A stretch of 64,000 bases of DNA from Macrostomum lignano (Eukaryota): contig NIVC01000438.1 of NCBI GenBank assembly GCA_002269645.1, forward strand, positions 287,379 through 351,378, in the 5' to 3' direction. Positions 10,563-56,868 of this stretch are shown one piece after another. The translations under genes and the position numbers were made by a program. The first letter of the stretch is position 1. Every line of letters starts with the position of its first letter. The notes below the pieces were generated by a model, which saw only the letters and a list, made by a program, of their open reading frames with translations, did not search any database and was not told where the DNA came from.

Positions 10563-11540
10563 CCTCTACCCTTCTCCCTTACCCCTTCTTACCCCTACTT
10601 ATTACCCTCTGCCTTACCATCTTTTCGTTGCCCTATTCCCCTACCCTTCTCTCCTACCCTCTCCCTACCCTAGAGCAATCTTCTCCCCTACCCCTTTCCC
10701 CTTACTCTCCTCCCCTACCCTCTTCCCTCCACTCCCGATAACCTTAAGCCCTCTTTTCCTACCCTCCATCCCTATCACCCTCCCCTACCCTCCTCCCCTA
10801 GAGGCTTACCTGTACCACTCCCCCACCCTCCTTCCCTAGCTTCCTCCTCTTACCTTCCCTACCCTCCCCCGACCATATCCTTATCCTTATCCTTACCCTA
10901 TTCCTTTACCCTTCTTCCCTACTCTCCCTACCTTCTTCCCTCTAACCCCACACCTCCTCTACCCTCTACTTCTTACCAACCGCTCTACTTACTCCTTGCC
11001 CTCTTTCCCTACTCTCTCCCTCCACCATAACCGCAACCCCTTTTTCTAATCGTCCTTTTCTATCCTCCTTCCCTACCTCCTCCTACCCTCCTTCCCTATC
11101 CTCTTCCCCTACTCTTTCCCTCACTCACTGCTGGAAGAAGCTCTCTCTACCCCTCCCCTGCCCTTAACCCCTCTTCCCCTATCCTTTTTCCCTAGCTTCC
11201 TCTTACCCCCCCCTTTCCTAAGATCCCAACCCTCCCCCGACCTCTACTCCTTGCCCTATTCCTCTACCCTTTCTCCTGCCCTCCCTACTCTCTTCCTTCT
11301 ATCCCTCCCTCTACCTCCTCCTCTACCATCTACTTCTTACCCTTCGTCCTAACCTCCATTCCTTGCCCTCCTTCCCTACTCTGTCCCCTATTCTCAACCT
11401 CCTTTTCCCCTACCCTCCTTACCCTTCTCTTCTACCCCGTACCCTCTCCCTCTATCTCCTCTCTACCCTGCTCCCCTAGCCTTCTTTTCTACCCTTCTCC
11501 TCTCCCTTTTCCCCATCCTCTTTCCCAACCTCCACCTCTA
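10563..11540. repeat. Polypyrimidine low-complexity tract between left TIR and passenger gene
   Basis: Almost exclusively C/T with CCCTA/CCTCT motifs; absent from the right arm. Confidence 0.85.
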
Positions 11541-22938: not shown

Positions 22939-22971
22939 AACAGCTGAAATCACAAAAGAAGGAGAGTAAGA

Positions 22972-26085
<3,114 letters not shown>

Positions 26086-27029
26086 GAAGCTTGCATATAG
26101 GGTCAGTTTTCCATGGTATGAATTTTCGAGACTAAGAAATCTCGAGCTTTTGACACGCCGAAAATGGATGTAGCTGTATCCTACACTATCGAAAGCGACA
26201 AATTTACCTGCAAAATTTTGAGCCATGCAGTTAACTTATTAACAGTATATCAATACCAAAGGGAGAGCTGAAATTTTTGCAGCGCCGGAACGGAGCAACA
26301 CAGGCACAGGAAATTCTTTGATGTCGCTGACCAAAAGTAACAAGATCATATATGGCAACTCTTTATTAACCTCCCGTCATTCTGATCTGTATGATGTAGG
26401 ACTCTCAAAACAGTCCAGCATCACCGACGCGATGACGTGCATGTAAACTTTAATGCGACGTGGTTAGTTTATTATATTGTAATCGAACCGAGTTTTTACG
26501 AAGATCAAGCTAAAATGTGATCAAAAGTAACTAAAAATAAGGCTACTATAAAATTTAGAAAATTATCTTTCAGGTGTACGGTCCAAGTCATGCATGCATG
26601 GTTTCGACTGCTGAAGGTGCCGACGACGGCTGAATGAAGATCGAATGCTGGAGAAACGCATCAGTTAATTTAGGTCTGCCAATAATCTGCCAATAAATGT
26701 ATATTGCAACAGGATCTCTATAGCTACTGTAGTTACATGATGCCATCTTTTGAAGGTGCCGACGACGTCGAGGTGATGTTTGGATGCTTGAGAGCTAGAC
26801 TATAGCTGAGGATTTCCAGCAGCTGAAGTTTTCCACCAGTTGCTCTCTCAAGGCTATGATCAGCGAAGAACTAGAGAGAAATTCGCATCAGTGTCCATAT
26901 AGTCACCTGGTGCCCAACCTGTTGAGGGTTCAGGAGCTCCGTCTGGGTGAAGACCAGCAGGGACCAATGAGGTGAGAGCTGATGCAGACACGTGTGGAAT
27001 TTGAAGGCTTGGCAAGGGTCTTTAAAATT

Positions 27030-27720
27030 TGCTTGCGAAAATTTGGTTGCCGAAGTCTGCTTGCCGAATTTTTCTTGTTGAATTTTTCTTGCCGAACTTT
27101 GCTTACCGAACTTTGCTTGCAGGAACTTTGCTTGCCGAACTTTGCTTCCAGGAACTTTGCTTGCAGGAACTTTGCTTGCAGGAATTTTGCTTGCCGAACT
27201 TTGCTTGCAGGAACTTTGCTTGCAGGAATTTTGCTTGCCGAACTTTGCTTGCAGGAATTTTGCTTGCCGAACTTTGCTTGCAGGAACCTTGCTTGCCGAA
27301 CTTTGCTTGCAGGAATTTTGCTTGCCGAACTTTGCTTGCCGAACTTTGCTTGCCGAACTTTGCTTGCAGGAATTTTGCTTGCCGAACTTTGCTTGCCGAA
27401 CTTTGCTTGCAGGAACTTTGCTTGCCGAACTTTGCTTGCAGGAATTTTGCTTGCCGAACTTTGCTTGCAGGAACTTTGCTTGCAGGAATTTTGCTTGCCG
27501 AACTTTGCAGGAACTTTGCTTGCCGAACTTTGCTTGCAGGAACTTTGCTTGCAGGAATTTTGCTTGCCGAACTTTGCTTGCAGGAATTTTGCTTGCCGAA
27601 TTTTGCTTGCCGAACTTTGCTTGCAGGAATTTTGCTTGCCGAACTTTGCTTGCAGGAACTTTGCTTGCAGGAACTTTGCTTGCCGAACTTTGCTTGCCGA
27701 ATTTTGCTTGCCGAGGTTTG
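27030..27720. repeat. 14/15-bp minisatellite (GCCGAACTTTGCTT / GCAGGAAYTTTGCTT)
   Basis: Visible tandem array of two alternating units; a few inverted units at 29187-29250. Confidence 0.95.
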
Positions 27721-28008
27721 CCAGCCAAAATTTTCATGTGGAACCTTAAAGAACCTATTTTTGAGCTCTTGTATTTCTAATTTTCATTTTCTGAGATTCG
27801 TGAAAGTCGCCTATAGTGTTATGATTTTGTATGAGGATATGGCGGATTTGAAAAGCCCTAACGCAGAAGCTTTCGAAACTCCACGGAACTTTCGGTTCTA
27901 TTTTAACTTTCGTTCCTCAATGACAAGTACACGACACTGTACTCGTGAAAATCCGCCAGTCCAAGTGCGTTTACATTTTTATATACTAATTATATATTAG
28001 CATCACTA

Positions 28009-28836
28009 CGAGGGGCACTATTAAAGTTCTGAGCCTGACCAAGATCTTATAGTGGCAAAGTGTTGAAACTTTAGGCTCTAAAAGCGCCACATGTTAATAG
28101 TCTATTGTCAACTTTTCAGAATTTTCTGCATTCCCCTGCAGGGCCCTTTCTGCAGGGCCCTGCCAACTTTCTGTCCTGCTGCGTGACCGGGGATGAGACG
28201 TGGATCCATCACCACGATCCCGAGTCCAAGCAGGAGTCCAAGCAGTGGCTGCCAGTTGGTTCACCTGCACCACTGAAGGCACGGACTGCATGCAGTGCGG
28301 GCAAGATTATGCTCACCGTCTTCTGGGATGCCAAGGGCCCGCTGCTGCTGGACTTTCTACCGCACAAGCAGACAGTCACAGGCGCCTACTACGCTGACCT
28401 GATCGCCCGTCTGTGCGAGGCAATCAAGGAAAATAGGCGAGGGATGCTGAGCCGAGGTGTTGTGCTGCTGCACGACAATGCACCGGCCCACACTAGCAGG
28501 ATTGCCAAGGCTGCTGTCAGTGTCGCAGGGTTTCGAGAGCTGCCGCACCCAGCCTATTCACCAGACCTGGCCCCGAGCGACTTCCACCTGTTTCCACATC
28601 TCAAGCGGGCGCTCCGTGGACAGCGATTTGACACTGATGATGCGCTGAAGGATGCTGCAACTGCTTGGTTTGAGGGCTGCTCGGTGCAATTCTTCCAGAG
28701 TGGCATTGAGGCGCTGCGATCAAGATGCCATAAGTGCATCTTGGTTGGGGGAGACTATGTTGAGAAAAGTTGATCTCACTTTGCCCATATCTCCTCTCTT
28801 TCATATTAAGGCTCAGAACTTTAATAGTGCCCCTCG
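28009..28836 (+). mobile_element. mariner (DD34D) element, internally deleted
   Basis: Perfect 28-bp TIRs TA|CGAGGGGCACTATTAAAGTTCTGAGCCT...AGGCTCAGAACTTTAATAGTGCCCCTCG|TA. ORF 28105-28773 has VTGDETW, WVPHEL absent, HDNAPAH and YSPDLAPSDFHLF (D-34-D), but lacks the N-terminal HTH. Only 828 bp long. Confidence 0.95.
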
Positions 28837-29980
28837 TACAAGTATCATATCTGCTCAATCGTGCTGAAATCAGGAACTACAAAAGTTTATACTGTTACCG
28901 ATCCCTATCTACCTATTCTAAATCTCTAATCATTTATATATACTAAATACTTAGAATGAAACTCTATAAGCCTAGTTTGAAAGCTTAGTGTCAAGTCAGT
29001 TTACGTCGACGCTGATAAGAATCCACTTGCCACTTGCAAAGAAGCATCTGTATAGTAGGCCTAAGCTCCTAAGTAATAATTGACTGACCAACTTCACAAG
29101 CAATCAAAACAAGCAAGCAAGCAAGAAAATAATTCGGCAAGTTAAAACCTTGCAATTGTGATTGCAAACTTCTAGGAAGCAGACATCAAAGTTCCGCAAG
29201 CAAAATTCGGCAAGCAAAGCTCGGCAAGCAAAGTTCGGCAAGTAAATTTTCCGCATGCAAACGTCGTACTTCCTTGGCAAGGCTGCACTGACGCGCAGTG
29301 TTGATTAGCGCTCAGAGCTAAGTAACATATAGCTCTGCTGCATTTCCTACATTTAAAGTGCATACTTTTTGATTTAATATACAATAAAGCAGGTTTACAA
29401 GCCAATTTATTCAAGTACATGTAAAAAGCAACAAACTACAAAATTGTCTTTGAAACCTTAGGGACAGATTTATCGGGTAACTAAAATATTATGCTAATCA
29501 GTTTATTAATTACATTCAATTGATGATGCGTACATACGTACATAGACATGTACTACGATTACGAAGTACAGTACCGCGGTAATATTAGAAGCTTTAATTA
29601 TTGTAGTAATGGTTAATTTTTATTGCAGCGATATACATACATGTACATGTACAATTGTACATGCAAGGGGTCACAAACTAAAATCGGATCGGTTTAAAAT
29701 TAGCAGAGTTATTACGATCCGATGATCTACATTGCTAACAAAATAAAAAGCCGCTATACCATTCAAAATGTCGACAAAGAAAAAGTTTGCATGTCCAAAC
29801 GGGTTTTGCATTTTCAGTACGCACTTGCGATGTGCATGTATTGTTGCCGCTTTCATAACCAAGCTGTCTGTGTCCATTTGCTAGCAGTCGCCGCCTCGGA
29901 ATCCAACGCATTAAGTTTTTCCTTGACTTTGTTGATCTTCTCTTCGTCCTGACTTTCTAGAATAGTAAACTTCTCATCCT

Positions 29981-32900
29981 TCACTGTTTCCATCTGTCGC
30001 AGACAAACTCAACGTGCTCACGGCAGTCGCTGTAGTGAGCCAGAGTGAGCAGCTCCTCCAAGTCCGGGTCTTCTTCCAACTCTGTCTTCCAATTATCGAA
30101 TGCGATTGCAGGCGAGCGATTGCGGAGCAGCTCAGCTTGGAGACTCCAGCTCAGGCAGCGGAAGTTCACGTACAGGTGGTGGGAGGAGCGAGGTTGTGAC
30201 AGTCTGGCTGTGAACAGAGTCTGCGTGAACTCGGGAAGAAATGGAAATCGAGGAGGATTGCAGCAGGAAAGGCAGAACCTCAAAAACCAGTCCATTTTAC
30301 ATGTAGCTTGAACTTGACTGCTCTGCAACTCCTTGATGACTCTCTCAGCCTCCTCAGATTCACCAAACTTCAAATGCGCCATGACGGTCATGCACAGATA
30401 GGCGTGCTTGTACCACTGAAGCTCATTTAAAAGACTAAGCTGCTTCATCAAGGCTTCACTGGATTCTGATTGCAGCTCTCTAATGCACTGGTGCACCACG
30501 CTGTATGCGTCTGCAAATTTTCCATATCTACAAGATCGGATTTGAGAAACACTAGGTGGCGTCGTGAGCGGCAGCAGCGTGAACGGATGGAAGTAAAAAC
30601 TTTCTGATTTAAGAGGTCTCACAAGTGCTCTCATCTGCTCAACCACTCTGTCGATGTCGCTTCTCAGCTCGCTCAGTCGATCTCGAACCGTCGCCTTCGT
30701 GTTGATGAAGTCGCCGCCGATTCCAGCGTTCTTGAAGTAGAGCGGTGCGTCTTGCATGAAGAAGTGCGGCATGCACTCATCGGGTGAGCTGCTTGAGTCA
30801 ATGAAGTTCAGCATCATTTCGAGAGACTCTTTCAACAGAGCGATCAGATTCTCCGGTTGCCAAGTTGACGCATTTTTCACGCCGTGTTTCTCCAGCATAA
30901 AGAATAGCAGTGTCTTGGCGTGGTAGGTTTTGAGCCCGGGTGCGTCTTTAATGACTGGCAGGTGCAACTTAAATATGAACTTTATGGCCGTAAACAACTG
31001 GCCCTGAACTGTACATAAGCGCTTCATTATGCTTCTCTCATGGAAGCTGAAGCTCACTCTGAGCTCATCTTCCATTTTCGGTCTTGTCGCCCTCACCAGG
31101 TGCACGTTATAAACACTGTAGTTCAGCAGCCTCCGAACTCTATCCTCACAATAGCTGCTGCAGCACTGCATTGCGTGGCACAGATCCTGCGCTGGGCGCA
31201 TTCCGCAGGCCTTCGCTTCCACTGATGGCTGGCTACCTAAAATTGAAAATGATGAAACAACCGGCTTTGATTCATTCCTTCGAAATATAGACTTAATTTT
31301 TTCGAGCCAGTCAACACCAAAAACTTCAATGAAGAGATCACTGTCTGAACAGAAATCCGACGTCTTTCGACGTTTATGATAGAGAATTATTGAATATGTG
31401 CTGTTACTATACGCCAACGTTCATCCGATGTAATGTAATGTAATGTAAAAGTACATATTTGTCGTAGACGTCAGGAACGGTTTTCGATACGTCTAATGTA
31501 CATGTACCGTAAACCTGGACTCACCGGAACCCACGGGCACCTGCGCGTGACCCTTTAATACTCGCAATTTGGTGGTGGCATCTCTGCAGCCTTGAAATGT
31601 TGACACTCCATCGCAGCCGCCTTCGAGATGAAATATTTGCGTAGCAATCAGCACCGTCCAGTCAATATCTGAGTGAGCAGCTGTCCTGCCGTTCATTTGC
31701 ACCAGACTGTTCGCCCAGCCCTCTGCGTAGCTGCCCGTCATCCGCCTGCCATCCTGTGTCAGCACTTGAGCTACGGCTTCTAACCATTTAGCCATTCCCT
31801 GCTGATACTCCGCTCTTTTCCTGGTGAATCCTGCCTTGCACAGCAGCCGATGCAGCTCCTCACTCAGACGTTGATCTCGGAGGCTAAATAAAATTGGATA
31901 GCATCATGCACGAAATCAGTAATTTTCATGTTGCCTTTATCAGCTCAAAATAAAAAGAAATATCAACGTTAGCACTGAAATGGAGCCCGTTTATCACTGC
32001 TCCAGACCAAAACCGATTGCGTTCGATAACTTTTTGGAATTATTGGCTAGCCTGCGCAACATTCCGACGTCAGCCGACGTCCCCGGTGTATCCGAAGTCG
32101 ATGAACGTCGCTAGAAAATGGGAATTTTCACATCACACCGACGAATTTCGGTGTAATAAAAGTTTTCCAATTGCAATCGACATTGATAGAGGTCGAAAAC
32201 ATCGGTCGAAGCCTCTGGCATCAGATTGCTTTACCGGTAAAAACACAGAGACATTCCAACCCAGGTCCCTCCCCTTGGCCTCTGGGGGGATTATTAGGAT
32301 AAGATCTAAGGATCTAGAAGAATAGCACCCATAGGATCGCACCCGAGGGGGACAGAATTGCATCAAACATTTACCGGTTTGTCTTTGGTCATCCTCAAAA
32401 AATGATCTGCACTTCGACTATGGTTTATACTAGCTGTTTCCCAGTCTAGCCACTTTATGATATTTTAGTTAAACTCGTTCGTGTATTTAGCTGCAACTGA
32501 CGATCCTGAGCTTTTTAGTATTAGTAAGTAGAGACGACGCCAACTCCTCCTCTGGAGGAGAAAGGGGAAGAACTCAAATGTATTTTTAATCTTAAGTTTT
32601 CAGTTGCAGTCGCTTGTTTTACGACTTAACTTTTAGCTCCATTTTGGCGCTTGATTAGACGTATCCTTTTTCAAGTCTTGGCACAAATTGGATCTTAAAC
32701 TCACGTCCTACTCGATGGCTTCAACAGCCGCAGCACCTGCGAGTGTCCGTGCCGTTCTGCCAGCTGCTCGCACGTCAGGCCCCGACCGTCTCGATGACTT
32801 GCATCCGCCCCTCTGTCTGCTAGAGTCTTGGCAGCTCGCACGTGGCCTTCTTTGCACGCTCGTGACAGAGCAGTCCGACCCTGGCTGTCTTCAGCACGCA

Positions 32901-33891
32901 CTGACGCACCGAGATTCAACAGTTTCTCAATGACTTCATGATGACCTGCATCAGCTGCCAGCATAAGAGCAGTTGCTCCACTACTATCTGGTAGATCGAC
33001 GTGTTGTCTGCTGAATCGCTTGTCATTAACCAGTGAGAGAGCTAGTGCGACATGGCTTTGAAAAATGGAGAGACAGAGCAGCTGTACGATCTGAGCTGGC
33101 TGCATTTTAGACAGTGTTACAGTAAGAACAGAGTTTCTGCCCTCAATGGCCATTGCAGCAATGAAGCTGAGGATTATGCTAGATTGGAAGAGCCAGTCGG
33201 GCTCGAGGCCAAGAAAGACAAGGACATTTTCCTGATGACGAGAACTAGCCGCGACCGCGCAATCTCGACGAAATTCGCTTCTCAGATGTTGATTTTCAAC
33301 AGCTTTATAAAGAAATTGGAACACGTCTAACTGACCTTCTCTTGCAGCGAATTTGGCAGCCTCTGTGCAGCACCTGTCTCGGATATTTTTGTCACCAATC
33401 GACTGCACTAGAAACTCTGAAACTTCCAACTGACCGGAGACCGCTGCACATTTCGTAGCCTCGACGCTGCAAAGCTGTCTCACAATGGGATCATCAATTG
33501 TCGTTATCAGAAACTCAACAACATGCAGTTGACCGTCAGTTGACGCCGATTCGGCAGCCTTTACGAAGCAATGATTCTTCGTGTCCGGTCCGATTATATT
33601 CTGCAGAAGGAACTTCATCATTTCCAACTCGCCTTCGCTTGCCAGAGGCCTGGCAATTTCCATGCAGCACTGGTCTCTAACTTGTTCATTAGCAACCTGC
33701 GATAACAAGAACTTTACCACTTCAAACTGACCATCAACGGCTGCAGTCTTCGCTTCCGCAACACAGAATAAGTCCCTATCGTGGCTGTACCGTATACTTC
33801 GGATTTCTTGTTTCAAATTCTTCAAAGCTTCTTTTTCCTCTTTCTTCTTCTCAGCTGTTTTTGAGTCCGTAGGACAGAGTTTTTCTGCCAT
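29981..33891 (-). CDS. Ankyrin-repeat + Mab-21/cGAS-like nucleotidyltransferase (cGLR-like), ~933 aa; exons 33891-32705, 31883-31525, 31236-29981
   Basis: Donor AC|GTGAGT (phase 2) matches acceptor TTTAG|C CTC CGA; donor TCCG|GTGAGT (phase 1) matches TTTTAG|GT AGC. Exon 1 has degenerate repeats plus canonical ANK repeats (GATALMLAA.., GRTALSRAC..). Exons 2-3 have the NTase motif GSYAEG...SDID, a third Asp in QDLC, and the Mab-21 motifs LRVSFSFHE, IKFIF, KTYHAKTLLF. Confidence 0.8.
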
Positions 33892-34439
33892 TTTAAAACG
33901 TCTTATAATTTCGGGCTTTTGAATTTAACACATTCCGTAAAATCAAAAAACGAAGTGTAACCACTTTGCAGCAAAGTATTTGATTTTAATCATTAGAAAT
34001 CTCTGTTGACTGAACAAGCAATTTATATTGATGGGTGTTGAAGCTCTTGCTGTGTTCGATGCAGCCAACAGAGGGTTGATAAAAGCTTTGCTGTAGAGGT
34101 ACCTGGTACATTTAGTCAAGTTTAGGCAATTTACTTGTACATTTCGCTCCAACAGGCGTAGATTAAAACAAATGATACCCTTTTTTATCACTCTTGGACG
34201 ACTAAACTGCATTTGGTTTGCTCTATGTTAAACATAGGATGCTAAAATGTACATCGCATTTGTAATCAAAATGGAAGCCCGACCGCACTGTCGTTTGACT
34301 GCAAACTGTTTGAATCTTTTGGCTAAGGTTAGACAGTCCGTTTTTGGATTTTAGGATCCAGAAGCTACATGCTATTTTAAAAAATAACTATATCTTCAAA
34401 TTAACGGCAATGTAACCATCAAACTTGCAATTCATTTCT

Positions 34440-35590
34440 CACCTCTCTGATCCATCAGATCCCACCTCTCGGATCCATTCCCCACCTCTTGGATCCATTC
34501 CCCACCTCTCGGATCCATTCCCCACCCCTCGGATCCATTCCCCACCCCTTGGATCCATTCCCCACCCCTCGGATCCATTCCCTACCTCTCGGATCCATTC
34601 CCTACCTCTCAGATCCACCTCTCAGATCCATTCCCTACCTCTTAGATCCATTCCCCACCTCTCGGATCCATTCCCTACCTCTCAGATCCACCTCTCAGAT
34701 CCATTCCCTACCTCTTAGATCCATTCCCCACTTCTCAGATCCATTCCCTACCTCTCAGATCCACCTCTCAGATCCATTCCCTACCTCTTAGATCCATTCC
34801 CCACCTCTCGGATCCATTCCCTACCTCTCAGATCCACCTCTCAGATCCATTCCCTACCTCTTAGATCCATTCCCCACCTCTCAGATCCATTCCCTACCTC
34901 TCAGATCCATTCCCTACCTCTCAGATCCACCTCTCAGATCCATTCCCTACCTCTTAGATCCATTCCCAACCTCTCGGATCCATTCCCTACCTCTCAGATC
35001 CACCTCTTAGATCCATTCCCTACCTCTCAGATCCACCTTTCAGATCCATTCCCTACCTTTCAGATCCATTCCCTAGCTCTCAGATCCATTCCCTAGCTCT
35101 CAGATCCATTCCCACCCTCTAGGATCCATTCCCCACCTTTCAGATCCATTCCCTACCTCTCAGATCCATTCCCTACCTCTCAGATCCATTCCCCACCTTT
35201 CAGATCCATTCTCTACCCCTCGGATCCATTCCCTACCTCTCAGATCCATTCCCTACCTCTCAGATCCACCTCTCAGATCCATTCCCTACCTCTTAGATCC
35301 ATTCCCTACCTTTCAGATCCATTCCCTACCTCTCAGATCCATTCCCACCCTCTAGGATCCATTCCCCACCTTTCAGATCCATTCCCCACCTTTCAGATCC
35401 ATTCCCTACCTCTCAGATCCATTCCCTACCTCTCAGATCCATTCCCCACCTTTCAGATCCATTCTCTACCTCTCAGATCCATTCCCTACCTCTCAGATCC
35501 ATTCCCCACCTTTCAGATCCATTCTCTACCTCTCAGATCCATTCCCTACCTCTCAGATCCATTCCCCACCTTTCAGATCCATTCCCTATC
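34440..35590. repeat. 20-bp minisatellite (GATCCATTCCCTACCTCTCA)
   Basis: Visible tandem array with interspersed 12-bp truncated units. Confidence 0.96.
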
Positions 35591-36228: not shown

Positions 36229-39200
36229 ATGGAGCGCAAGCAACAGGCGGGCTCCACATCGCCCGCGTCAGCGAAGCGGAGTCGCGGCAAGCGTATCTCG
36301 TCGGGTGTCAGAAAAGTTCTCACTGGCCAGCTGGCACAGATGGTGAATGAGCAGTCAAGCGCTGAACAACCAAGAGGAACGAGAAGCTATCAAACCGAGG
36401 TTCCAAATCCTGCAAGTCCAGTGGGTCAGCTTGAGAGCAGTGGAGATCAGGTTGGGTCGTTGTTGGGCCAGCTACGAGTACAAAGCTCCCCCATCGGTGA
36501 GGCACATAATCAGGAAGTACAACAAGTTGGTTCGCTGGTAGATCAGTCTGGAAGCTTGCCGCTTGGTCATCTCGATGTTCAACAAAGACCACAAGGCAGT
36601 TCGTTGGCTGCTCAGCTTGGAGGTTCATTAGGTAAAAAATTGGGCAAGAAAAAGAAAGCCGGCTCAAAGCTTGCTGGGTCGTTAATAAAGCAAGTTGGAG
36701 AGCAAGGAGACAGCACCGGAAGTGCTATCGCTGGTCAACTTGGTGGGTCACTGCTTGGACAGCTTGGCGGAGGACAAGGACGACAAGGCAGTGGACACGA
36801 AGGATCGCTGGCTGGAAAAATTGGCGGGTCACTTCTTGAACAGTTCAGCGGAGGACAAGGCGGAGGACAAGGAGGAGGACAAGGAGGATCGCTGGCTGGT
36901 CAACTTGGCGGGTCACTTCTTGGACAGCTTGGCGGAAGACAAGGCGGAGGACAAGGAGGACAAGGCAGTGGACACGCAGGATCGCTGGCTGGAAAAATTG
37001 GCGGGTCACTTCTTGGACAACTTGGCGGAGGACAAGGCGGTGGACAAGGAGGAGGACAAGGAGGATCGCTGGCTGGTCAACTTGGTGGGTCACTGCTTGG
37101 ACAGCTCAGCGGAGGACAAGGCGGTGGACAAGGAGGAGGACAAGGAGGATCGCTGGCTGGTCAACTTGGTGGGTCACTGCTTGGACAACTCGGAGGAGGA
37201 CAAGGCGGTGGACAAGGGGGTGGACAAGGGGGTGGTTCACCGTTCGGACAACTGGGTGGTTTGGCAGGAGGTGGTGGCGGCGCGAAGCCTCCAGCAGCAG
37301 GCGGTGGTAAGGCAGGTCCAGCCGCAAATCCTGTGCTTAACACTGTGGCATGCAGCGCATTTCAAGGAATACGAAGAGCTGCAGAAGCAAAGAGCATCCC
37401 GATGAAGGTGTACTGGATTCTTATGGTTTTAGTTTCTGTCGGAATGTTCATCCAAGGCGTAACCAATTTGACAACTAAGGTTCGAACTGTACAAGTAGTG
37501 AGAACGTACCAAATGGACAAGGTGCCCTTCGTGTTCCCAGATCTTTACTTCTGCCCAAAGAACGCTTATTCTGGTAGTTTTCCGTTTACACTAAATCAAA
37601 ATCAGGCCGACGTGGTAAATCGAGAAGTGGCCAAGCTGAGCAAGCTTTATGATGAACAGTTGGCAACAAGCGGTCTCGATGAGTCGTCTAAAACAAAGGT
37701 TTGGTCAATTCAGCAATCCCTGCCAGTTCATATATTGCACGACTACATCTTTCATCGGCCAAAGCAGTCTTTGTTTTACCCGCCAATGATTTCATACCAC
37801 GGCAAGATCAACTATGAAACAGTGTTCCTTCCAAAGGGCAGAATCTGCTTCAAAGTCGCTCTAAGTGACGAAGACAAAAGGGTGCTAATTCGCAGACAAA
37901 ATCAGGAGACACTTCGACTGGCTCTATTCACGGATCCGCCATTTCGCGACTTCAAATATGCCGGGGAGCTAATCAATCCGATCTTCAATCCGAAGACCAA
38001 CGAGACGATACCATTTAGAATGTGGTACCCATCTGGTATAGTTAAGACGATGGCATCTGGATACACAATGCTGGTGGTACCTGCCGGAGTCTATCCATCG
38101 CTGGAGCACGAGAGCAAGTTTCTACTGGCGCCGGGTAAATCCTACGACATCGACATTCACATGGAGGAGCACAAGTTCAGCCCCGAGTTGTGGGACACGC
38201 ATTGCTCGCCGCAGCAGAAAACTGCCTACTTTGCTGACCACTTTACTGGCAAGAAAGTTGAATACAACTATAGCTACGATGCGTGCTATTACACAGAGTT
38301 TGCTCGATAACTGCACAAGATCGGCGGTTACATTCAGCAAGGTTTCCCCGTTAGTTGGGATCTTCGAGGTAGTCCAAGATGGGGTAACCTGTCAGAGAAC
38401 AGCAAGATTAACCGGAGCACCATCGAATATGGGATGGACTTAACCAAAGCCGATGAATCGGCTAATCCAGTGAAATTTTGCAATAGCCAACAGGCTTGCG
38501 TGCAACAAAAGTATGTTTCATCGTTTTCGTTTCATAATTGGCCCTCAATTGGCGGATCTTATTCGGCCGCTTTTCAACAGACGGATCCGAATGAGCAACC
38601 CGCAATTTACCAGCTAGCCACCATTGCCAAGCAGTTGGACGCAGGTAAGTTTTTCAATACATGTATATGTGACGCTTAGTGCCTAATTAGTATTATGTAA
38701 TTGTATTACAGTGAACAAACAAAGTACACAAAAGCACACAGACACATCAATGCTTGTATTCGTCCGTCTGTCAGGTCGGTGGTTCGATTCTCGACCCACT
38801 CGGAACAATTTGTGTCCTTGAGAAAAAAACTTAACTCTGCATTGCTTCAGCTCATGCAGCAGTAAAATATGTGCAGCATTAGCTGGGGTAATTGAGGGCG
38901 TGTGTGGCGACCCCCCAGTCCTTGGACTAAACAGCCGTACGCAGCCTTCAGATGCGCCGCGCAATAGCTGGGGCTGAGCTGTCGGTGGCACATCAGGCCC
39001 AATTGGGCAGGTATTTTCAGTTATTATTAATTATTATTACTCGCCCGGCAACATTCCAATGTCCGCCGACTTACTCGACATACCCGACGTCGTTGGAAGC
39101 CGTTGAAAAGTATGTAACATTACCTATTTTCCTGGTGATGTCGATAGATGTCAGAAACTTCAGTCGATGTAAATAGATGTCAAAAACTTCAGTCGATTTC

Positions 39201-39972
39201 GATAGATGTCAGAAACTTCTGTCGGTGTCAATAGATGTCGGAAAATCCATCCGATGTTGATAGGCATCGGAAACGTCGGTCGATGTCGATAAACATCGGA
39301 AATTTCGGACAATGTCGATAGATGACAGAAACTTCAGCTGAAATCCCTGACATCGGATTGCTAAACGAGGCAGTCCCACAGGGTTTTTAATATCCTGTGA
39401 CTTTCTCATGCCCCTAAAATTCTAGTTAAGAAATGTCTAGCAATCAAAGAAAAAAATTGCTGAATAGCGTTTCAGACATTTTGTGAGCTTTGACAGTGAC
39501 AGAAACATACGCAAATTCTCCATTAAAATTTGCAGGCCAGCACTCAACGCATTCGGAAGCGACACTGCGCCACTTCATCGCCGAGTCGATGCTTGAAGTC
39601 AGCATCCGAGTCGACAACCCGCAAGCAGCTCGAGTCCTCATGACAGCCTCATATTCAGGCACGTCGTACTTGTCCGACATTGGCGGCTTGATGGGCCTGT
39701 ACCTGGGCTGCAGTGTACTGACGCTCTGCGAATTCGTTGAGATGTTCTACGCGAAGGCAACGACATTTGTCAAGACAAAGTGCCCGGGACGACCGAGCAG
39801 CGCTCAGGGTGATGAAGAAAACAATGATGATGAAAACGATGATGCTCGAAACAATGAAGCTGACGGCTTGGACAAGCCTGTTGGTGATGAGGCTGAGATG
39901 ACTCCGTTGAGAACAGCTGAAACCGAAGTTTGCTCTGCAACTGGACACAGCCCGATTGAGGCAGTGGTTTAA
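36229..39972 (+). CDS. DEG/ENaC (amiloride-sensitive sodium channel family) gene 1; exons 36229-38644 and 39536-39972; in-frame TAA at 38308-38310
   Basis: TM1 (KVYWILMVLVSVGMFIQG), post-TM1 FVFPDLYFCPKN, and TM2 LSDIGGLMGLYLGCSVLTLCEFVE with a GxS filter. The frame stays open after TAA up to the donor GCAG|GTAAGT; the acceptor is TTTGCAG|GC (phase 1). The gene may be a recent pseudogene. Confidence 0.85.
36700..37260 (+). repeat. Coding Gly/Gln repeat (GGSLAGQLGGSLLGQLGGGQGGGQ) in ENaC gene 1 N-terminus
   Basis: Six to seven in-frame units within ORF 36229-38310. Confidence 0.9.
39130..39330. repeat. Degenerate ~27-bp repeat (CGATAGATGTCAGAAACTTCAGT) in ENaC intron
   Basis: Four to five imperfect copies. 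Confidence 0.65.
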
Positions 39973-40629
39973 CGACAAGTTTTCCAGACAAGTTGTCCCA
40001 TTTCTTACGTGTTTCTTGATCCATGCACATGTATATAATAAAATGTGAATTTCAAACTGTTTATGATTTTTAATTGGGGCCCCCAGGCCCGAAGCAGCTC
40101 CTAATAATTAATAATTAATATGTGCGAGTCTAATTATTACTATCTCATATGCAAAGTTTGTGTATTAGATGAGCATGGCTGTACGAAGTCCGGTGCCACT
40201 CGATTCAGTCTGTACATGACTCAATGATTTGCTATCTCATCTACTCGAATAATATTGTTTCCCCAAGTTTGAAGTCTTCCGACTCAGAAGATTCGGCGCC
40301 AGTAGCTACGGTGGGAGATAAAAGTACAGACAAAAAGGGAGACAGCTTGACTTTTAAGAAGCAAGTTTGCCTTACATAGCCAGAAGTTTCGTGTCGCTTT
40401 TGGAACTCCTATAACTGAGTAATTCAATGTCAAACGAAGAATACCAGTCCGCAACTTCAGAGAGTCAGCAAGATGAAGAACAATCCAGCGATGAGGCGAA
40501 ACAACAAACAAAAAGCTCCAAACTCTGCAACATCAAAAAACATTCCCAAGACGCTAGCAAAACAGAAATCCGTCAGAAAGACAAACAACCAAGAGGTCAA
40601 AAAGGGCAAACAGGATCATTTTTAAACCA

Positions 40630-41200
40630 ACAACCAATTCAGTTTTGAAATCAACAACCAATTCAGTTCGGAGACCAACAACCAATGCAGTTTGGAGACC
40701 AAAAACCAATGCAGTTCGGAGACCAACAACCAATGCAGTTCGGAGACCAACAACCAATGCAGTTCGGAGACCAACAACCAATGCAGTTCGGAGACCAACA
40801 ACCAATTCAGTTCGGAGACCAACAACCAATGCAGTTCGGAGACCAGCAACCAATGCAGCTCGGAGACCAACAACCAATGCAGTTCGGAAATCAACAACCA
40901 ATTCAGTTCGAAATCAACAACCAATTCAGTTCGGAGACCAACAACCAATTCAGTTCGGAGACCAAAAACCAATTCAGTTCGAAAATCAACAACCAATTCA
41001 GTTCGGAGACCAAAAACCAATGCAGTTCGAAAATTAACAACATATTCAGTTCGGAGACCAAAAACCAATTCAGTTCGGAGACCAACAACCAATTCAGTTC
41101 GGAAACCAACAACCAATTCAGTTCGGAAATCAACAACCAATTCAGTTCGGAGACCAAAAACCAATTCAGTTCGAAAATCAACAACTAATTCAGTTCGGAA
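40630..41200 (+). repeat. 24-bp repeat encoding QQPMQFGD in ENaC paralog 2 N-terminus
   Basis: CAACAACCAATGCAGTTCGGAGAC units in frame with ORF 40427; later units are 23 bp and shift the frame. Confidence 0.9.
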
Positions 41201-42624
41201 GCAAGCAATCAAATAAGCTCGACAACCATCAAACAGCTTCGCTTGGATTGCCTCAAGAGGGAGAGGTCAAGTTGTCAGTCCATTTGTAAACCAGTTTGCT
41301 ACCCATTATCCTGTTCAATTTGGACAACCTGGAATTTCCCGGTTGTCTGGCGTCGGTCATGTCGAACAGTCTGGAGGCAGTCCATATACTGGACAATTGC
41401 TGAGTCCGATGATGGCAATGTACCCTTATCCCGTTGCTATAAGTCCCATGACAGGACAGCTTGGTAGTACACACTTGCTACCCCCTGGAACTCAATTTTC
41501 TAATCACAATCAAGAGGATGATGACGACTTTAAGCAACAAATCCGGTGAGGCGAAGACAAAAGCACGCTGAGTCACCGGTTAGACAACGTGAAAGCTAAT
41601 CCTTGAGGCAAAGCCGACAAGGAGCATCATCCGTTGGTGTTCCCTGTCGTCCTTCGTCTGAACAGCAGGAGTCAACCGTTGGATCGCTGGTGGGACAGCT
41701 AGGTGGATCACTGCTCGGTGAGGTGGCTGGCGGTGAACAAGGATCAGGTTCCGTAGTTGCAAGACTGGGCGGTTCACTGCTCCGTCACATGACACGTGGA
41801 GATCACGAGAATCAAGGAGGCTGTACATCAAATGAAGAAGTTGGCGAAGCAGTGCTTACTCAACTTGGAGGTGCACTTCAGACTAAACAAACTGATCGAG
41901 GTCAGAGACCGGGTTCATCTCTAATTGGCATGCTAGACAGTTTTGCAAATGGAGGTGACCACCACGAGGAAGACGCTAACGCCAGAGACCCTCCAGCTGG
42001 TGGAGAAGAGGCCCAGTCTCCAGAGCAGGAGCCACAAGAGGATTTTCGTGTGCAGAAGGTGCTAATAAAAATGACCGATAGCCTGCAGCGCTGTGCAAGG
42101 CATATGTAGAGCAGCTGCAGAGCAAAGCCTTCCAGTGAGGGTATTCTGGATTCTGATGGTGCTATTATCAATCGGCCTGTTCATCAGGGGTACAATGTCG
42201 CTTTCTGGACGAATAATCAATGTTCGAGTTGAAAGAACCTTTCTGCTAGGAAAGGTGCCGTTTGTCTTCCCAGATGTGTACTTTTGTCCGAAGAACACCT
42301 ACTCCGGTAGTTTTCCATACACAATCGCTAAGGAGCACGCAGATCTGGTGAATCGAGAGGTTCAAAGACTTAGTCGGCTGCTTGATCAGCAGCTTCCCAA
42401 CAGCGGATTCGATTCGTCCTTCGGAACGAAGGTTTGGCTGATCCAACAGTCGCTGCCGATGTATTTGCTGGAAAAGTGCATCATGCAAAGACCCGAGCAA
42501 TCCTTGTTTTACAACCCAATCATATCCTATTACAATGACGTGAAATACGAGGCTGTTTCTTCACTATTTTGCCATCCTTGCCAGAAATACGGCCACTGAT
42601 CGATTGGACGCTTCGATTAGACTC

Positions 42625-43910
42625 TAAAGCCCCTGGTGCTGGCGCCCCTGGTGCTGGCGCCCCTGGTGCTAAAGCCCCTGGTGCTGGCGCCCCTGGTGCT
42701 AAAGCCCCTGGTGCTGGCGCCCCTGGTGCTGGCGCCCCTGGTGCTGGCGCCCCTGGTGCTAAAGCCCCTGGTGCTGGCGCCCCTGGTGCTAAAGCCCCTG
42801 GTGCTGGCGCCCCTGGTGCTGGCGCCCCTGGTGCTAAAGCCCCTGGTGCTGGCGCCCCTGGTGCTAAAGCCCCTGGTGCTGGCGCCCCTGGTGCTGGCGC
42901 CCCTGGTGCTAAAGCCCCTGGTGCTGGCGCCCCTGGTGCTAAAGCCCCTGGTGCTAAAGCCCCTGGTGCTAAAGCCCCTGGTGCTGGCGCCCCTGGTGCT
43001 GGCGCCCCTGGTGCTAAAGCCCCTGGTGCTGGCGCCCCTGGTGCTGGCGCCCCTGGTGCTGGCGCCCCTGGTGCTGGCGCCCCTGGTGCTGGCGCCCCTA
43101 GTGCTGGCGCCCCTGGTGCTGGCGCCCCTGGTGCTGGCGCCCCTGGTGCTGGCGCCCCTGGTGCTGGCGCCCCTGGTGCTGGCGCCCCTGGTGCTGGCGC
43201 CCCTGGTGCTGGCGCCCCTGGTGCTGGCGCCCCTGGTGCTGGCGCCCCTGGTGCTGGCGCCCCTGGTGCTGGCGCCCCTGGTGCTGGCGCCCCTGGTGCT
43301 AAAGCCCCTGGTGCTAAAGCCCCTGGTGCTGGCGCCCCTGGTGCTGGCGCCCCTGGTGCTAAAGCCCCTGGTGCTAAAGCCCCTGGTGCTGGCGCCCCTG
43401 GTGCTAAAGCCCCTGGTGCTGGCGCCCCTGGTGCTGGCGCCCCTGGTGCTAAAGCCCCTGGTGCTGGCGCCCCTGGTGCTAAAGCCCCTGGTGCTAAAGC
43501 CCCTGGTGCTAAAGCCCCTGGTGCTGGCGCCCCTGGTGCTAAAGCCCCTGGTGCTAAAGCCCCTGGTGCTGGCGCCCCTGGTGCTGGCGCCCCTAGTGCT
43601 GGCGCCCCTGGTGCTGGCGCCCCTGCTGCTAAAGCCCCCGCTGCTAAAGCCCCTGCTGCTAAAGCCCCCGCTGCTAAAGCCCCCGCTGCTAAAGCCCCTG
43701 CTGCTAAAGCCCCCGCTGCTAAAGCCCCTGCTGCTAAAGCCCCTGCTGCTAAAGCCCCTGCTGCTAAAGCCCCCGCTGCTAAAGCCCCTGCTGCTAAAGC
43801 CCCCGCTGCTAAAGCCCCTGCTGCTAAAGCCCCCGCTGCTAAAGCCCCTGCTGCTAAAGCCCCTGCTGCTAAAGCCCCCGCTGCTAAAGCCCCCGCTGCT
43901 AAAGCCCCTG
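42625..43910. repeat. 15-bp minisatellite (GCCCCTGGTGCTGGC / GCCCCTGGTGCTAAA, grading to GCCCCYGCTGCTAAA)
   Basis: Visible array; source of the GAPGA/KAPAA pseudo-ORF. Confidence 0.97.
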
Positions 43911-44490
43911 TCTCTCTTGTTTGGCGCCCCTGTCTCTCTTGTTTGGCGCCCCTGTCTCTTGGTTGGCGCCCCTAGCCCTGTTTCTCTTGTTTGGCACTCC
44001 TGTCTCTTGGTAAGCGCCCTGTCTCTTGGTGAGCGCCCCTGTCTCTTGGTAAGCGCCCCTGTCTCTTGGTAAGCGCCCCTGTCTCTTGGTAAGCGCCCCT
44101 GTCTCTTGGTTGGCGCCCCTAGCCCTGTTTCTCTTGTTTGGCACTCCTGTCTCTTGGTAAGCGCCCCTGTCTCTTGGTGAGCGCCCCTGTCTCTTGGTAA
44201 GCGCCCCTGTCTCTTGGTGAGCGCCCCTGTCTCTTGGTAAGCGCCCCTGTCTCTTGGTGAGCGCCCCTGTCTCTTGGTAAGCGCCCCTGTCTCTTGGTAA
44301 GCGCCCCTGTCTCTTGGTGAGCGCCCCTGTCTCTTGGTAAGCGCCCCTGTCTCTTGGTAAGCGCCCCTGTCTCTTGGTAAGCGCCTCTGTCTCTTGGTGA
44401 GCGCCCCTGTCTCTTGGTAAGCGCCCCTGTCTCTTGGTAAGCGCCTCTGTCTCTTGGTGAGCGCCCCTGTCTCTTGGTGAGCGCCCCTGC
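43910..44490. repeat. 20-bp minisatellite (GTCTCTTGGTAAGCGCCCCT)
   Basis: Visible array abutting the 15-bp array and sharing the GCGCCCCT core. Confidence 0.95.
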
Positions 44491-46249
44491 CTTCTGTGCC
44501 GGTGGATGCCACTTCCGAGAGCTGGCTAAAGCCGAGTTTCTGTCGATTTTGTCGAGTTTGGTCACCTCTTTTATTCCGTTTTTGGGCGAGCAAAATTTTG
44601 CTCGAATTAGTTCTACCCGATAGAGTCAGGCAAGAGTTCGCTACAAACAAGCGCCAAGAGCTGATCCTGGCAATGTTCATCGATTCGCACTTCTTTGAGT
44701 TTGATTACACTGGCGATCAAATCCGTCCGATTGTTAATCCGGTGAACAGCGAGAGTGTGTCGTTTCGAGACTGGCTGCCGCTGACTGGCGTACGCGAGAA
44801 CATGTTTCGATCCGGCTGTCAGATGCTAATCATTCCCAGGGGCGCCTATCCGTTCATTGATTACGACACGAAGTTAAGCTTGGCACGGGGCAGGTCCTAC
44901 ACAATCTCTGTTGGCATGGAGGAGCTGGTGTACGGTGAAGAGTTGTACAGTAGTCACTGCTCACCGAATCACGCAAGTGCACTCTTTACTGACCATCTGA
45001 CTAGCAAGCTGGTTAAGTACAATCACAGCTACACCGCCTGTCTGTACATTGAGTGGGACAAGAGATGCTACAAAGAGACTGGCGCCCTTCGGCACTACTA
45101 TCGTAGGCCGTGGGCCCTGTGCCACGCGCCCAGATGGGACAATCTGACCGAAATGCTGGTCTTGAACCGCTCAGCTGAGCAAATGGCTCTGGATGAACAG
45201 TTGGTCACGGATCCGACCGAGTACTGCCATCGGAATCAACCGTGAGGATATTCGCGTTATTACACGCAGGGCTTTTCATTCTACAAGTGGCCGAAATTCC
45301 GGAGTTTCGCGAGTTTACGCCAGAGAAGCAGCCAGCATTGGCTAAGCTGGGCCGCTTTGCTAGAAAACTGGACGAAGAAGGTAAGAAGAATGATTGGCAT
45401 TCCTGACTAATAGTCACTAGGTGTACTGTTGATGAATAAATGCTCTATAGATGCTGTATATATCTAGCGTATCTTCTTAAGTGGTATTTATTAAAATATC
45501 TTCAGCAGCGTTGATTATCTTCAGCAGCGTCTGTGCCCTAAAAGGAGCCACCTCTCTTTTATTAGAGGCAGGGGGCTGTTTAAGGCGCACTTTAAGCGAC
45601 ATTGTCATACAACCGGCGAGAGGCATTACTGTCCATTCCGCCGACTCCCCTGAGCAGGCACACAAGCGCGCAGATACGTAAGCAATCAAGCAGTCATACG
45701 CACAGGCGCACACTCACAGGAGCGTACAGCGGCCCTAACTTTATTTACCATTAGGCAATGTACACTTCACTGTGCCTTGGGGGTTGGCCCTCAAATGGCA
45801 TTAATTGCGCGAGCAGAGCCAAGCCAAGATTACAATTAAGCCCAAAGTAGTATGACTGCCTTGGAATCGAGCCTGGGCCACTGGCATATCAGAGAACACA
45901 GGGCTACGCCCCCCTCTAATCCCAGTTATTTCTGACATCAGTTGCTTTAGTTAGTGGAATCAACGAGTTACGAAATGCTGTTTTACACACAAACATAGTA
46001 AAATTTGTGTACTGCACATGTACACACGTTTATAAACATGAAAAACATGAATTTACACAGTTCCTCTCTTTGCATCCCACACCGTTTGACTGGAAACGAG
46101 TGTGTAAGATCCAATCCTCCCCTATTTCCCCACTACCGGCTGAATGAGGCAGAGAATGGCCCGTACATGTAAATGATGCGACGGTGGGATCCTAGACCTA
46201 ATACCGTACATGCAACCCTTTATATTGTTGTTGAGCACACATACATAGA

Positions 46250-46975
46250 TTCTTTGGAGGGGGATTCTTTGGCTTTTTTGGATGGGGATTATTTGGATAG
46301 GGATGAATGGGGGGATTCTTGGATAGGGATGGATGGGGGATTCTTTGGACAGGGGATTCTTTGGATGAGGGATTCTTTGGATGGGGATTCTTTGGATGAG
46401 GGATTCTTTGGATGGGGATTCTTTGGATGGGGATTCTGTGGATGATGGATTTTTTGGATGGGGATTCTTTGGATGGGGATTCTTTGGATGGGGATTCTTT
46501 GGATAGGATAATCTGTGGATGAGAGATTCTTTGGAGGGGGATTCTTTGGCTTCTTTGGATGGGGATTATTTGGATAGGGATGAATGGGGGGATTCTTTGG
46601 ATAGGGATGGATGGGGGATTCTTTGGACAGGGGATTCTGTGGATGAGGGATTCTTTGGATAGGATAATCTGTGGTTGAGGTATTCTTTGGATGGGGATTC
46701 TTTGGATGGGGATTCTTTGGATGGGGATTCTTTGGATGGGGATTCTTTGGATGGGGATTCTTTGGATGGGGATTCTTTGGATGGGGATTCTTTGGATGGG
46801 GATTCTGTGGATGATGGATTTTTTGGATGTGGGATTCTTTGGATGGGGATTCTTTGGATGGGGATTATGTGGATGATGGATTTTTTGTGATGGGGATTCT
46901 GTGGATGAGGGATTCTTTGGATGGGGATTCATTGGATGAGGGATTCTTTGGATGAGGGATTCTCTATACGGGGGA
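46250..46975. repeat. 15-bp minisatellite (GGATGGGGATTCTTT)
   Basis: Visible degenerate array. Confidence 0.93.

Positions 46976-55496: not shown

Positions 55497-55572
<76 letters not shown>

Positions 55573-56794: not shown

Positions 56795-56868
<74 letters not shown>

What the first reader, a model, noticed from the sequence alone, without database searches (positions are those of the whole stretch)
29981..33891. Ankyrin-cGLR fusion: candidate invertebrate innate-immune second-messenger synthase
What the ORF track shows as three separate ORFs splices into one ~933-aa protein. It has ~6 atypical plus ~3 canonical ankyrin repeats, then a Mab-21/cGAS-like NTase with an intact G[S]...DxD...D triad. 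No vertebrate-cGAS zinc thumb is visible, and a helical C-terminal extension follows. cGLRs are established pattern-recognition enzymes that make cyclic dinucleotides. The ankyrin array could be an unknown ligand sensor or an autoinhibitory module (inference).
Basis: partly seen in the sequence, partly recalled or inferred. Interest (0 to 1): 0.75.

Follow-up and report, generated by a model that had tools for sequence, protein, structure and literature searches.

The report
Flatworm ankyrin-cGLR gene, known family
The three reading frames do splice into one ankyrin-repeat plus cGAS-like enzyme gene with an intact active site, but it belongs to a large flatworm (Macrostomum) gene family that a 2023 survey already listed as ankyrin-fused cGAS-like receptors, and whose product and trigger are still unknown.

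Summary
On the minus strand, three ORFs join through canonical GT-AG introns (33891-32705, 31883-31525, 31236-29981) into a 933-aa protein. It has about 11 ankyrin-type repeats in an unbroken 33-residue register, then a Mab21/cGAS-like nucleotidyltransferase (G446-S447, D468-x-D470, D533). There is no cGAS zinc thumb, and a helical C-terminal extension follows.

Homologues fix the exon boundaries. The closest solved folds are human cGAS, MB21D2 and Cv-cGLR1. A profile-profile comparison with other animals' cGLR-type proteins gives E = 3e-35 and aligns all three catalytic motifs. dN/dS against a Macrostomum lignano paralogue is 0.19.

The interpretation as a candidate cGLR is reasonable but not new. 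Close relatives (62-74% identity) form an expansion found almost only in M. lignano: 88 clusters at E < 1e-30. Li et al. 2023 list these proteins as ANK-fused cGLRs. They cloned five, including my closest-studied homologue PAA68676.1, and none is among their 15 active enzymes.

So this is a new member of a known, still-orphan family. One caveat is a one-base frame change near 30005, which cuts off the conserved C-terminal tail. STING in this lineage was not tested.

The parts
32705..33891 (-). Exon 1. It starts at the ATG at 33891 and encodes a Lys/Glu-rich N-terminal helix (aa 10-32), then the ankyrin array (aa 39-395). The array has six atypical 33-aa repeats with an 'RDxCCxxAAxxAAxxGxLxVVxFL' pattern, two degenerate repeats and three canonical repeats.
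   Evidence: ORF; 33-residue register; Pfam Ank_2/Ank_4/Ank E 1e-19 to 1e-23; AF2 helix pairs at pLDDT about 90; Foldseek matches to ankyrin-1, AnkB R13-24 and MIB1 ANK over 370-430 columns.
31884..32704 (-). Intron 1 (821 nt, phase 2), GTGAGT...TTTTATTTAG.
   Evidence: The M. lignano P0003 gene has introns at the equivalent place, plus a 42-nt mini-exon that is not detectable here.
31525..31883 (-). Exon 2. It encodes the NTase spine helices, the G446-S447 motif, a long conserved loop (EGWANSLVQMNGRTAAH), D468-I-D470 and a conserved Cys/His-rich insert.
   Evidence: tblastn boundaries 31885/31523; motif conservation; AF2 strands 441-445 and 468-482.
31237..31524 (-). Intron 2 (288 nt, phase 1), GTGAGT...TTCAATTTTAG.
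   Evidence: The same intron position occurs in the M. lignano gene, where the intron is about 17 kb.
29981..31236 (-). Exon 3. It encodes the third catalytic Asp (D533 in 'RPAQDLCHAM'), the 'HLVRATRP...RVSFSFHE' motif, the Mab-21_C lobe (aa 608-680 in the 933-aa numbering), a conserved helical C-terminal extension (aa 752-932), and the stop at 29983-29981.
   Evidence: Pfam PF20266 at 29.8 bits against a cut-off of 24.1; profile hits to mouse cGAS at 1e-6.
29853..30005 (-). Site of a one-base frame change relative to M. lignano (about 30005), followed by the out-of-frame remnant of the conserved tail (…KDEKFTILESQDEEKINKVKEKLNALD…).
   Evidence: tblastn jumps from frame -1 to frame -3 at 30005/30002 for six of seven homologues; the DNA alignment shows a single-base gap after GAGTTT; ORF 29853-29993.

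Best explanation
This is a three-exon gene of a macrostomid flatworm. It encodes a member of the Macrostomum-expanded family of ankyrin-repeat cGAS-like receptors (ANK-cGLR).

Shown: an N-terminal solenoid of about 11 ankyrin repeats is joined by a short linker to a Mab21/cGAS-fold nucleotidyltransferase. That enzyme domain keeps the Gly-Ser loop and all three metal-binding aspartates, lacks the vertebrate zinc thumb, and carries a family-specific helical C-terminal extension. The sequence is under purifying selection.

Inferred: like characterised cGLRs, it rests inactive. A ligand reorders the unusually long, conserved loop between the GS motif and the DxD motif. The enzyme then joins two NTPs into a cyclic di- or oligonucleotide that a downstream receptor reads. 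The ligand may be nucleic acid bound on the basic NTase core (pI 9.05), or a protein captured or released by the ankyrin array. The array most likely acts as a protein-protein interface for recruitment, oligomerisation or autoinhibition. The size of the paralogue family fits a diversifying recognition role.
For: Gene model and boundaries.

Family: 37-46 word-index hits, nearly all M. lignano ANK + Mab-21_C proteins at up to 74% identity. An exhaustive profile search finds 88 clusters at E < 1e-30, and nine of the ten looked up are M. lignano.

Fold: AF2 model of the NTase part (pLDDT 74, pTM 0.78) matches human cGAS at 6.6e-6, MB21D2 at 5e-5 and Cv-cGLR1 at 7e-4.

Sequence profile: mouse cGAS at 1e-6 and cGLR1 at 4e-5. 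hhalign against other animals' cGLR-type proteins gives probability 99.9%, E = 3e-35, with the GS, SDxD and D columns aligned.

The catalytic residues are conserved in 22-25 of 25 paralogues. dN/dS is 0.19. The NTase core has pI 9.05, within the range above 8.5 that Li et al. report for nucleic-acid-sensing cGLRs. Li et al. classify the M. lignano homologues as cGLRs with ANK fusions.
Against: No activity has been shown for any member. Five M. lignano constructs (NTase part only) were screened with poly I:C and dsDNA, and none is among the 15 active enzymes.

The Pfam NTase-core model PF03281 does not hit this protein; only Mab-21_C does. The GS-to-DxD loop is about 9 residues longer than in cGAS and is modelled with low confidence.

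This copy has lost the frame of the conserved C-terminal tail. No transcript evidence exists for the exon 1 to exon 2 junction. Whether a STING or another receptor exists in this lineage was not tested. Li et al. state that most platyhelminths lack cGLRs, and the six platyhelminth rows seen in their Table S5 list 0 cGLR and 0 STING genes.
Confidence: 0.6

Rival explanations
1. It is a catalytically silent Mab21-type scaffold, like MAB21L1/2 or MiD49/51. The fold binds a nucleotide or a partner protein but makes no messenger. The ankyrin array and the C-terminal helices do the work as an adaptor.
For: MiD51 and MiD49 are among the structural matches (ranks 13-24). M. lignano relatives were not among the active enzymes in the published screen. 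PF03281 does not hit.
Against: All three acidic residues and the GS motif are kept in 22-25 of 25 paralogues that are only 26-74% identical overall. That is not expected if catalysis were dispensable. cGAS, MB21D2 and Cv-cGLR1 score better than MiD51. Many true cGLRs are inactive in vitro without their unknown ligand, as Li et al. state in their limitations.
Confidence: 0.2
2. It is an active nucleotidyltransferase, but not a cyclic-dinucleotide synthase. For example, it could make OAS-like linear 2'-5' oligomers, or transfer a nucleotide onto a protein or RNA held by the ankyrin array.
For: Only the fold and the triad are established, and OAS and other NTases share them. The family is very divergent from characterised cGLRs (11-15% identity to solved structures). 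It has a unique long GS-DxD loop and a conserved Cys/His cluster.
Against: The best sequence and fold matches are cGAS/cGLR rather than OAS or poly(A) polymerases. GLD-2 and TENT2 appear only at E > 0.1.
Confidence: 0.12
3. This particular copy is a decaying paralogue (young pseudogene) of a very large family, or it carries an assembly error. The one-base frame change at about 30005 would be the first lesion.
For: The frame shift relative to six homologues removes about 40 conserved tail residues. Transposon remnants and minisatellites crowd the locus. The mini-exon present in the M. lignano gene is not found here.
Against: The 933 codons before it have no stop across three exons. The splice sites are intact and every conserved motif is kept. 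dN/dS is 0.19. The change lies next to a T-run, a typical place for a sequencing indel. Tail length also varies among annotated paralogues.
Confidence: 0.08

Closest known systems
Macrostomum lignano ANK-cGLR paralogues, e.g. PAA68676.1 (BOX15_Mlig016402g1, my P0003), PAA93208.1, PAA62074.1 (P0052); catalogued in Li et al. 2023, PMC9980059, Tables S2 and S3
   Same: They share the domain order (atypical and canonical ANK repeats, NTase, helical extension) and the intron positions. Identity is 62-74% over the full length, and the GS / DxD / D residues are identical.
   Different: The window copy is not identical to any recorded protein, and its best identity is 74%. It lacks the 42-nt linker mini-exon and has a frame change that shortens the tail. 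It is probably from another Macrostomum species or an unannotated paralogue.
Characterised invertebrate cGLRs (Drosophila cGLR1, Crassostrea virginica Cv-cGLR1, Stylophora Sp-cGLR1) and human MB21D2
   Same: They share the Mab21/cGAS fold, the GS loop and acidic triad, and the absence of a zinc thumb. The catalytic core is basic.
   Different: Sequence identity is only 11-15%. This family has a longer GS-DxD loop, a Cys/His-rich insert, an ankyrin array of about 390 aa and a C-terminal extension of about 180 aa. No product or ligand is known.
Vertebrate cGAS
   Same: It is the best structural and sequence match among solved structures. The 'RVSFSxxE' and 'SYHxKT'-type motifs are shared.
   Different: There is no H(X5)CC(X6)C zinc thumb at the cGAS position and no disordered basic N-terminus. 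It is not an orthologue.
Stylophora pistillata ANK-cGLR fusions (Li et al. 2023, Fig. 4C)
   Same: An ankyrin array is fused to a cGLR core, and the authors propose it as a protein- or ligand-interaction module.
   Different: They come from a different phylum. I could not compare their sequences here, so independent fusion events are possible.

Membership tests
Mab21 / cGAS-like receptor (cGLR) superfamily | Mab21/cGAS bilobal nucleotidyltransferase fold | tested here: met
   The AF2 model gives Foldseek PDB matches to human cGAS (6.6e-6), MB21D2 (5e-5), Cv-cGLR1 (7e-4) and MiD51. Pfam Mab-21_C scores 29.8 bits, above the 24.1 cut-off. hhalign against other animals' Mab21/cGLR proteins gives E = 3e-35.
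Mab21 / cGAS-like receptor (cGLR) superfamily | Match to the Pfam NTase-core model PF03281 (Mab-21) | tested here: not met
   There is no hit at E <= 1 for this protein. More distant relatives such as P0131 do hit it. This reflects divergence of the core, since profile-profile alignment still covers it.
Catalytically competent cGLR (as opposed to MAB21L1/2-type) | G[S/G] activation-loop motif, [D/E]h[D/E], and a third acidic residue on the neighbouring strand | tested here: met
   G446-S447, D468-I-D470 and D533 are present. They are conserved in 22-25 of 25 paralogues, lie on predicted strands, and align to the GS / SDxD / D columns of the comparison profile.
Catalytically competent cGLR | Synthesis of a cyclic nucleotide second messenger | not testable with these tools
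   This needs biochemistry. Published NTase-only constructs of M. lignano relatives were not among the 15 active enzymes.
Pattern-recognition cGLR | Activation by a defined ligand (dsDNA, dsRNA or other) | not testable with these tools
   The only pointer is indirect: the NTase core has pI 9.05, within the range above 8.5 reported for nucleic-acid sensors.
cGLR-STING pathway | A STING (or other CDN receptor) encoded in the same genome | not tested
   No usable route was available. The window has no such gene. The literature searches found nothing for Macrostomum. The six platyhelminth rows seen in Li et al.'s Table S5 list 0 STING genes, but M. lignano is not in that table.
Vertebrate cGAS orthologue | H(X5)CC(X6)C zinc thumb between the WRLSFS motif and the C-lobe helix | tested here: not met
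   The HMM alignment to mouse cGAS shows that cGAS carries insertions at that spot which this family lacks. Only about 8 residues separate 'SFSFHERSIM' from 'QGQLF'.
ANK-cGLR fusion class (Li et al. 2023, Fig. 1C) | Ankyrin repeats on the same polypeptide as the cGLR core | tested here: met
   The in-frame splice model holds. More than 30 annotated M. lignano proteins share the fusion. It is listed in Table S2 of PMC9980059. The junction in this window itself has no transcript evidence.

The most novel reading that the evidence does not exclude
The Macrostomum ANK-cGLR expansion could be a diversifying receptor repertoire in which the variable ankyrin array, rather than the NTase groove, recognises non-nucleic-acid ligands such as pathogen proteins. 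This would be analogous to NLR sensor domains. The output could go through a non-STING route, which fits the fact that the other platyhelminths tabulated by Li et al. have no STING genes. Some paralogues carry a caspase on the same chain, which would point to direct coupling to cell death.
Probability: 0.15. Interest if true: 0.75.

Novelty: new member of a known kind. Interest (0 to 1): 0.35.

Why it matters
The gene adds one more, probably non-lignano, member to an orphan branch of the cGLR family. Flatworms were thought to have largely lost cGLR signalling, and Macrostomum is the exception, with dozens of ankyrin-fused copies.

Nobody yet knows what these enzymes make, what switches them on, or what reads their product in an animal group where other tabulated species have no STING genes. 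A second species' sequence helps separate conserved functional positions from lineage noise. Those positions include the long GS-DxD loop, the Cys/His cluster and the C-terminal extension. It also suggests that constructs for biochemistry should include the ankyrin array, which the published screen left out. By itself, this is confirmation and annotation rather than a discovery.

Tried and rejected
1. The alternative exon-3 acceptor at 31344 (969 aa) was rejected. Its 36 extra residues are absent from all homologues.

2. I first suspected that the third catalytic Asp was replaced by His in 'VHLVRA'. This was rejected. That motif corresponds to the cGAS 'yLVPK' strand. The true third Asp is D533 in 'PAQDLCHA', and paralogue P0029 has the canonical 'DLVPAF' there.

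3. The acceptor near 32551, and any cassette exon in intron 1, were rejected. The acceptor meets a stop after 10 codons, and no credible in-frame exon exists.

4. phmmer of the single sequence against PDB found nothing. The family profile was needed.

5. A paralogue search within the window found none.

6. An exact look-up of the exon-1 ORF in public assemblies found no record, so the source organism is not identified directly.

8. Literature searches for STING in Macrostomum found nothing.

9. A search of Li et al.'s supplements for caspase-fused members found nothing, but those files were truncated when stored.
Full report
**Observation**

The window is eukaryotic and rich in repeats. On the minus strand between 33891 and 29981 lie three long ORFs of 396, 100 and 478 codons. 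Reading the sequence and enumerating splice combinations gives one stop-free model:
- Exon 1 runs 33891-32705, with donor GTGAGT.
- Exon 2 runs 31883-31525, with donor GTGAGT.
- Exon 3 starts at 31236 (933 aa) or at 31344 (969 aa) and ends at the stop at 29981.

Homologues decide between the two acceptors. In the alignment of 13 relatives, none has the 36 residues that the 31344 acceptor would add. tblastn matches of seven relatives begin and end within two bases of 31883, 31525 and 31236.

The exon 1 donor is the least directly supported junction, because similarity ends at 32713. Three points support it. It is a consensus donor sitting immediately before the in-frame stop. It has the same phase, and almost the same position, as the corresponding donor of the annotated M. 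lignano gene for P0003. The M. lignano gene does have a 42-nt mini-exon here encoding a poorly conserved linker. I could not find a counterpart in the window.

**Anatomy**

Residues 39-401 keep an unbroken 33-residue register. That gives six atypical repeats ('RDxCC..AA..AA..G.L.VV.FL'), two degenerate repeats and three canonical ankyrin repeats. Pfam ankyrin families hit strongly. The full-length AlphaFold model has mean pLDDT 82, and about 90 over the array. It folds the whole region as helix pairs. These superpose on 370-430 columns of ankyrin-1, ankyrin-B R13-24 and the MIB1 ANK domain. The pTM of 0.59 means the relative position of the array and the enzyme is not predicted.

The C-terminal 537 residues hit Pfam Mab-21_C above its cut-off, but not the NTase-core model PF03281. 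A single-sequence search of PDB found nothing. The family profile, however, finds mouse cGAS (1e-6) and a cGAS-like receptor 1 structure (4e-5). The AlphaFold model of this part has pLDDT 74 and pTM 0.78. It matches human cGAS (6.6e-6), human MB21D2 (5e-5), oyster Cv-cGLR1 (7e-4) and then MiD51/MiD49. A profile-profile comparison with 14 more distant Mab21/cGLR-type proteins from other animals gives probability 99.9% and E = 3e-35 over 289 columns.

**Active site**

I first suspected that the third aspartate had become histidine in 'VHLVRA'. The alignments show otherwise. That motif is the equivalent of the cGAS strand preceding 'WRLSFS'. The true third acidic residue is D533 in 'RPAQDLCHAM', and paralogue P0029 has the textbook 'DLVPAF' there.

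G446-S447, D468-I-D470 and D533 are conserved in 22-25 of 25 family members that are otherwise only 26-74% identical. They sit on predicted strands. They align with the GS, SDxD and D columns of the outside profile.

The loop between the GS and DxD motifs is about nine residues longer than in cGAS. It is highly conserved in sequence and modelled with low confidence.

The cGAS zinc thumb is absent. The HMM alignment shows cGAS carrying insertions at that spot which this family lacks.

The NTase core is basic, with pI 9.05. Exon 3 compared with the M. lignano P0003 gene gives dN/dS 0.19 at dS 0.87, so the coding sequence has been under purifying selection.

**Relatives**

The word-index searches return 37-46 proteins. 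Nearly all are from Macrostomum lignano, and nearly all combine ankyrin repeats with Mab-21_C. The exhaustive profile search over 1.84 billion representatives finds 88 clusters at E < 1e-30 and 1173 at E < 1e-3. Of ten looked up, nine are M. lignano and the tenth, much weaker, is a tubeworm Mab21 protein.

The best identity to the window protein is 74%, and no exact copy of the exon-1 ORF is on record. The window therefore probably comes from another Macrostomum species or from an unannotated paralogue. I could not settle which (one search found nothing).

**What is already known**

Li et al. 2023 (PMC9980059) surveyed about 3,000 animal cGLRs. They state that 87% are stand-alone enzymes, but that some carry TPR or ankyrin modules. 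They show ANK-cGLR as a class in Figure 1C. [quoted passage not shown]

Their Table S2 lists M. lignano proteins, including PAA68676.1, with Ank_2 hits. Their Table S3 lists five M. lignano proteins (samples 89-93) cloned as NTase-only constructs for the 140-enzyme screen. Sample 93 is PAA68676.1 (BOX15_Mlig016402g1), which is my P0003. Sample 92 is nearly identical to P0008.

The 'Note' column is empty for these samples. The 15 active enzymes are described as coming from insects, anemones, molluscs, hydras and corals. The authors themselves say that many cGLRs appear inactive in vitro, probably because their ligands are unknown.

The architecture and the family are therefore catalogued. Their chemistry and biology are not.

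**Mechanism**

Shown: one polypeptide combines an ankyrin solenoid with a cGAS-fold transferase that has a complete metal-binding site, and that site is conserved under selection.

Inferred from the established behaviour of cGAS and cGLRs: ligand binding reorders the GS loop, and two NTPs are joined into a cyclic nucleotide signal. The basic core is compatible with a nucleic-acid ligand. The ankyrin array is a protein-binding device in every well-studied case, and it may recruit, oligomerise or autoinhibit.

I put 0.6 on 'active ligand-gated cGLR-type messenger synthase'. The rivals are:
- a silent Mab21-type scaffold, 0.2
- an NTase with a different product or substrate, 0.12
- a decaying copy, 0.08

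**Caveat on this copy**

Six of seven homologues switch reading frame at 30005/30002. The DNA alignment with the M. lignano gene shows a single-base gap after 'GAGTTT'. As a result the ORF ends at 29981. The conserved acidic tail remains readable in another frame down to 29853. This is either a sequencing indel beside a T-run or a real truncation of about 40 residues. It does not touch the catalytic domain.

**Surroundings**

The neighbours offer no functional hint. They are:
- a mariner transposase remnant directly 3' of the gene
- two tandem DEG/ENaC channel genes 5' of it
- Pol X-like exons at the far end
- many minisatellites
- a 3.1-kb inverted repeat pair around a DDE transposase remnant

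No second cGLR copy is in the window.

**Verdict**

The headline ('Ankyrin-cGLR fusion') describes something already in the literature for the sister species. It is a new member of a known, orphan family. Interest is moderate to low unless the ankyrin array or the caspase-fused paralogues turn out to define a new signalling mode.

Noticed in passing
window 29853-30005 (-): There is a one-base frame change relative to M. lignano paralogues, right after a T-run. The conserved tail (KDEKFTILESQDEEKINKVKEKLNALD...) continues in another frame. This is either an assembly indel or a real C-terminal truncation.
   Followed up: partly
L001 9070-9125 (M. lignano gene for P0003) versus window 31884-32704: The M. 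lignano gene has a 42-nt, in-phase mini-exon (NPQHLQAAAQRLHP) between the ankyrin exon and the first NTase exon. No counterpart is detectable in the window's 821-nt intron.
   Followed up: partly
protein residues H481, C486, H508, C535, C540, C541 (window about 31780-31160, -): A Cys/His cluster is conserved across the family inside the NTase core, including an H(X3)CC(X3)C-like string right after the third catalytic Asp. It may be a metal site, at a different place from the cGAS zinc thumb.
   Followed up: no
M. lignano proteins P0056 (PAA59752.1), P0190 (PAA80948.1), P0067 (PAA93319.1): Three separately annotated paralogues carry the same Mab21 module followed by ankyrin repeats and a caspase (Peptidase_C14) domain, E about 1e-25. 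Another model (P0053) adds WSC and RING domains. These could be real cGLR-caspase fusions or merged gene models.
   Followed up: partly
window 7474-10565 and 22969-26085: A pair of inverted repeat arms of about 3.1 kb, 96-100% complementary, made largely of minisatellite. They enclose 12.4 kb that holds a DDE_3 transposase remnant (16593-17129). This is either a giant transposon with long terminal inverted repeats or an assembly palindrome.
   Followed up: partly
window 28105-28773 (+): A mariner-type transposase remnant (Pfam Transposase_1, E 2e-21) lies just 3' of the cGLR gene.
   Followed up: partly
window 36229-39972 and 41603-45245 (+): Two tandem genes for amiloride-sensitive sodium channel (DEG/ENaC, Pfam ASC) proteins. 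Each has a glycine/glutamine-rich repetitive N-terminus. The second is interrupted by a long GAP/KAP minisatellite.
   Followed up: partly
window 62224-63890 (+): These exons resemble a family X DNA polymerase, with weak, sub-threshold Pfam hits to the pol lambda fingers and pol beta palm domains. A word-index homologue search found no relative at E <= 1e-5.
   Followed up: partly
window 453-3530, 26871-28000, 34425-34791, 40622-41216, 42569-44680, 46198-46932, 55140-57389: Dense minisatellite arrays produce long spurious ORFs on both strands and strong local GC skew.
   Followed up: no
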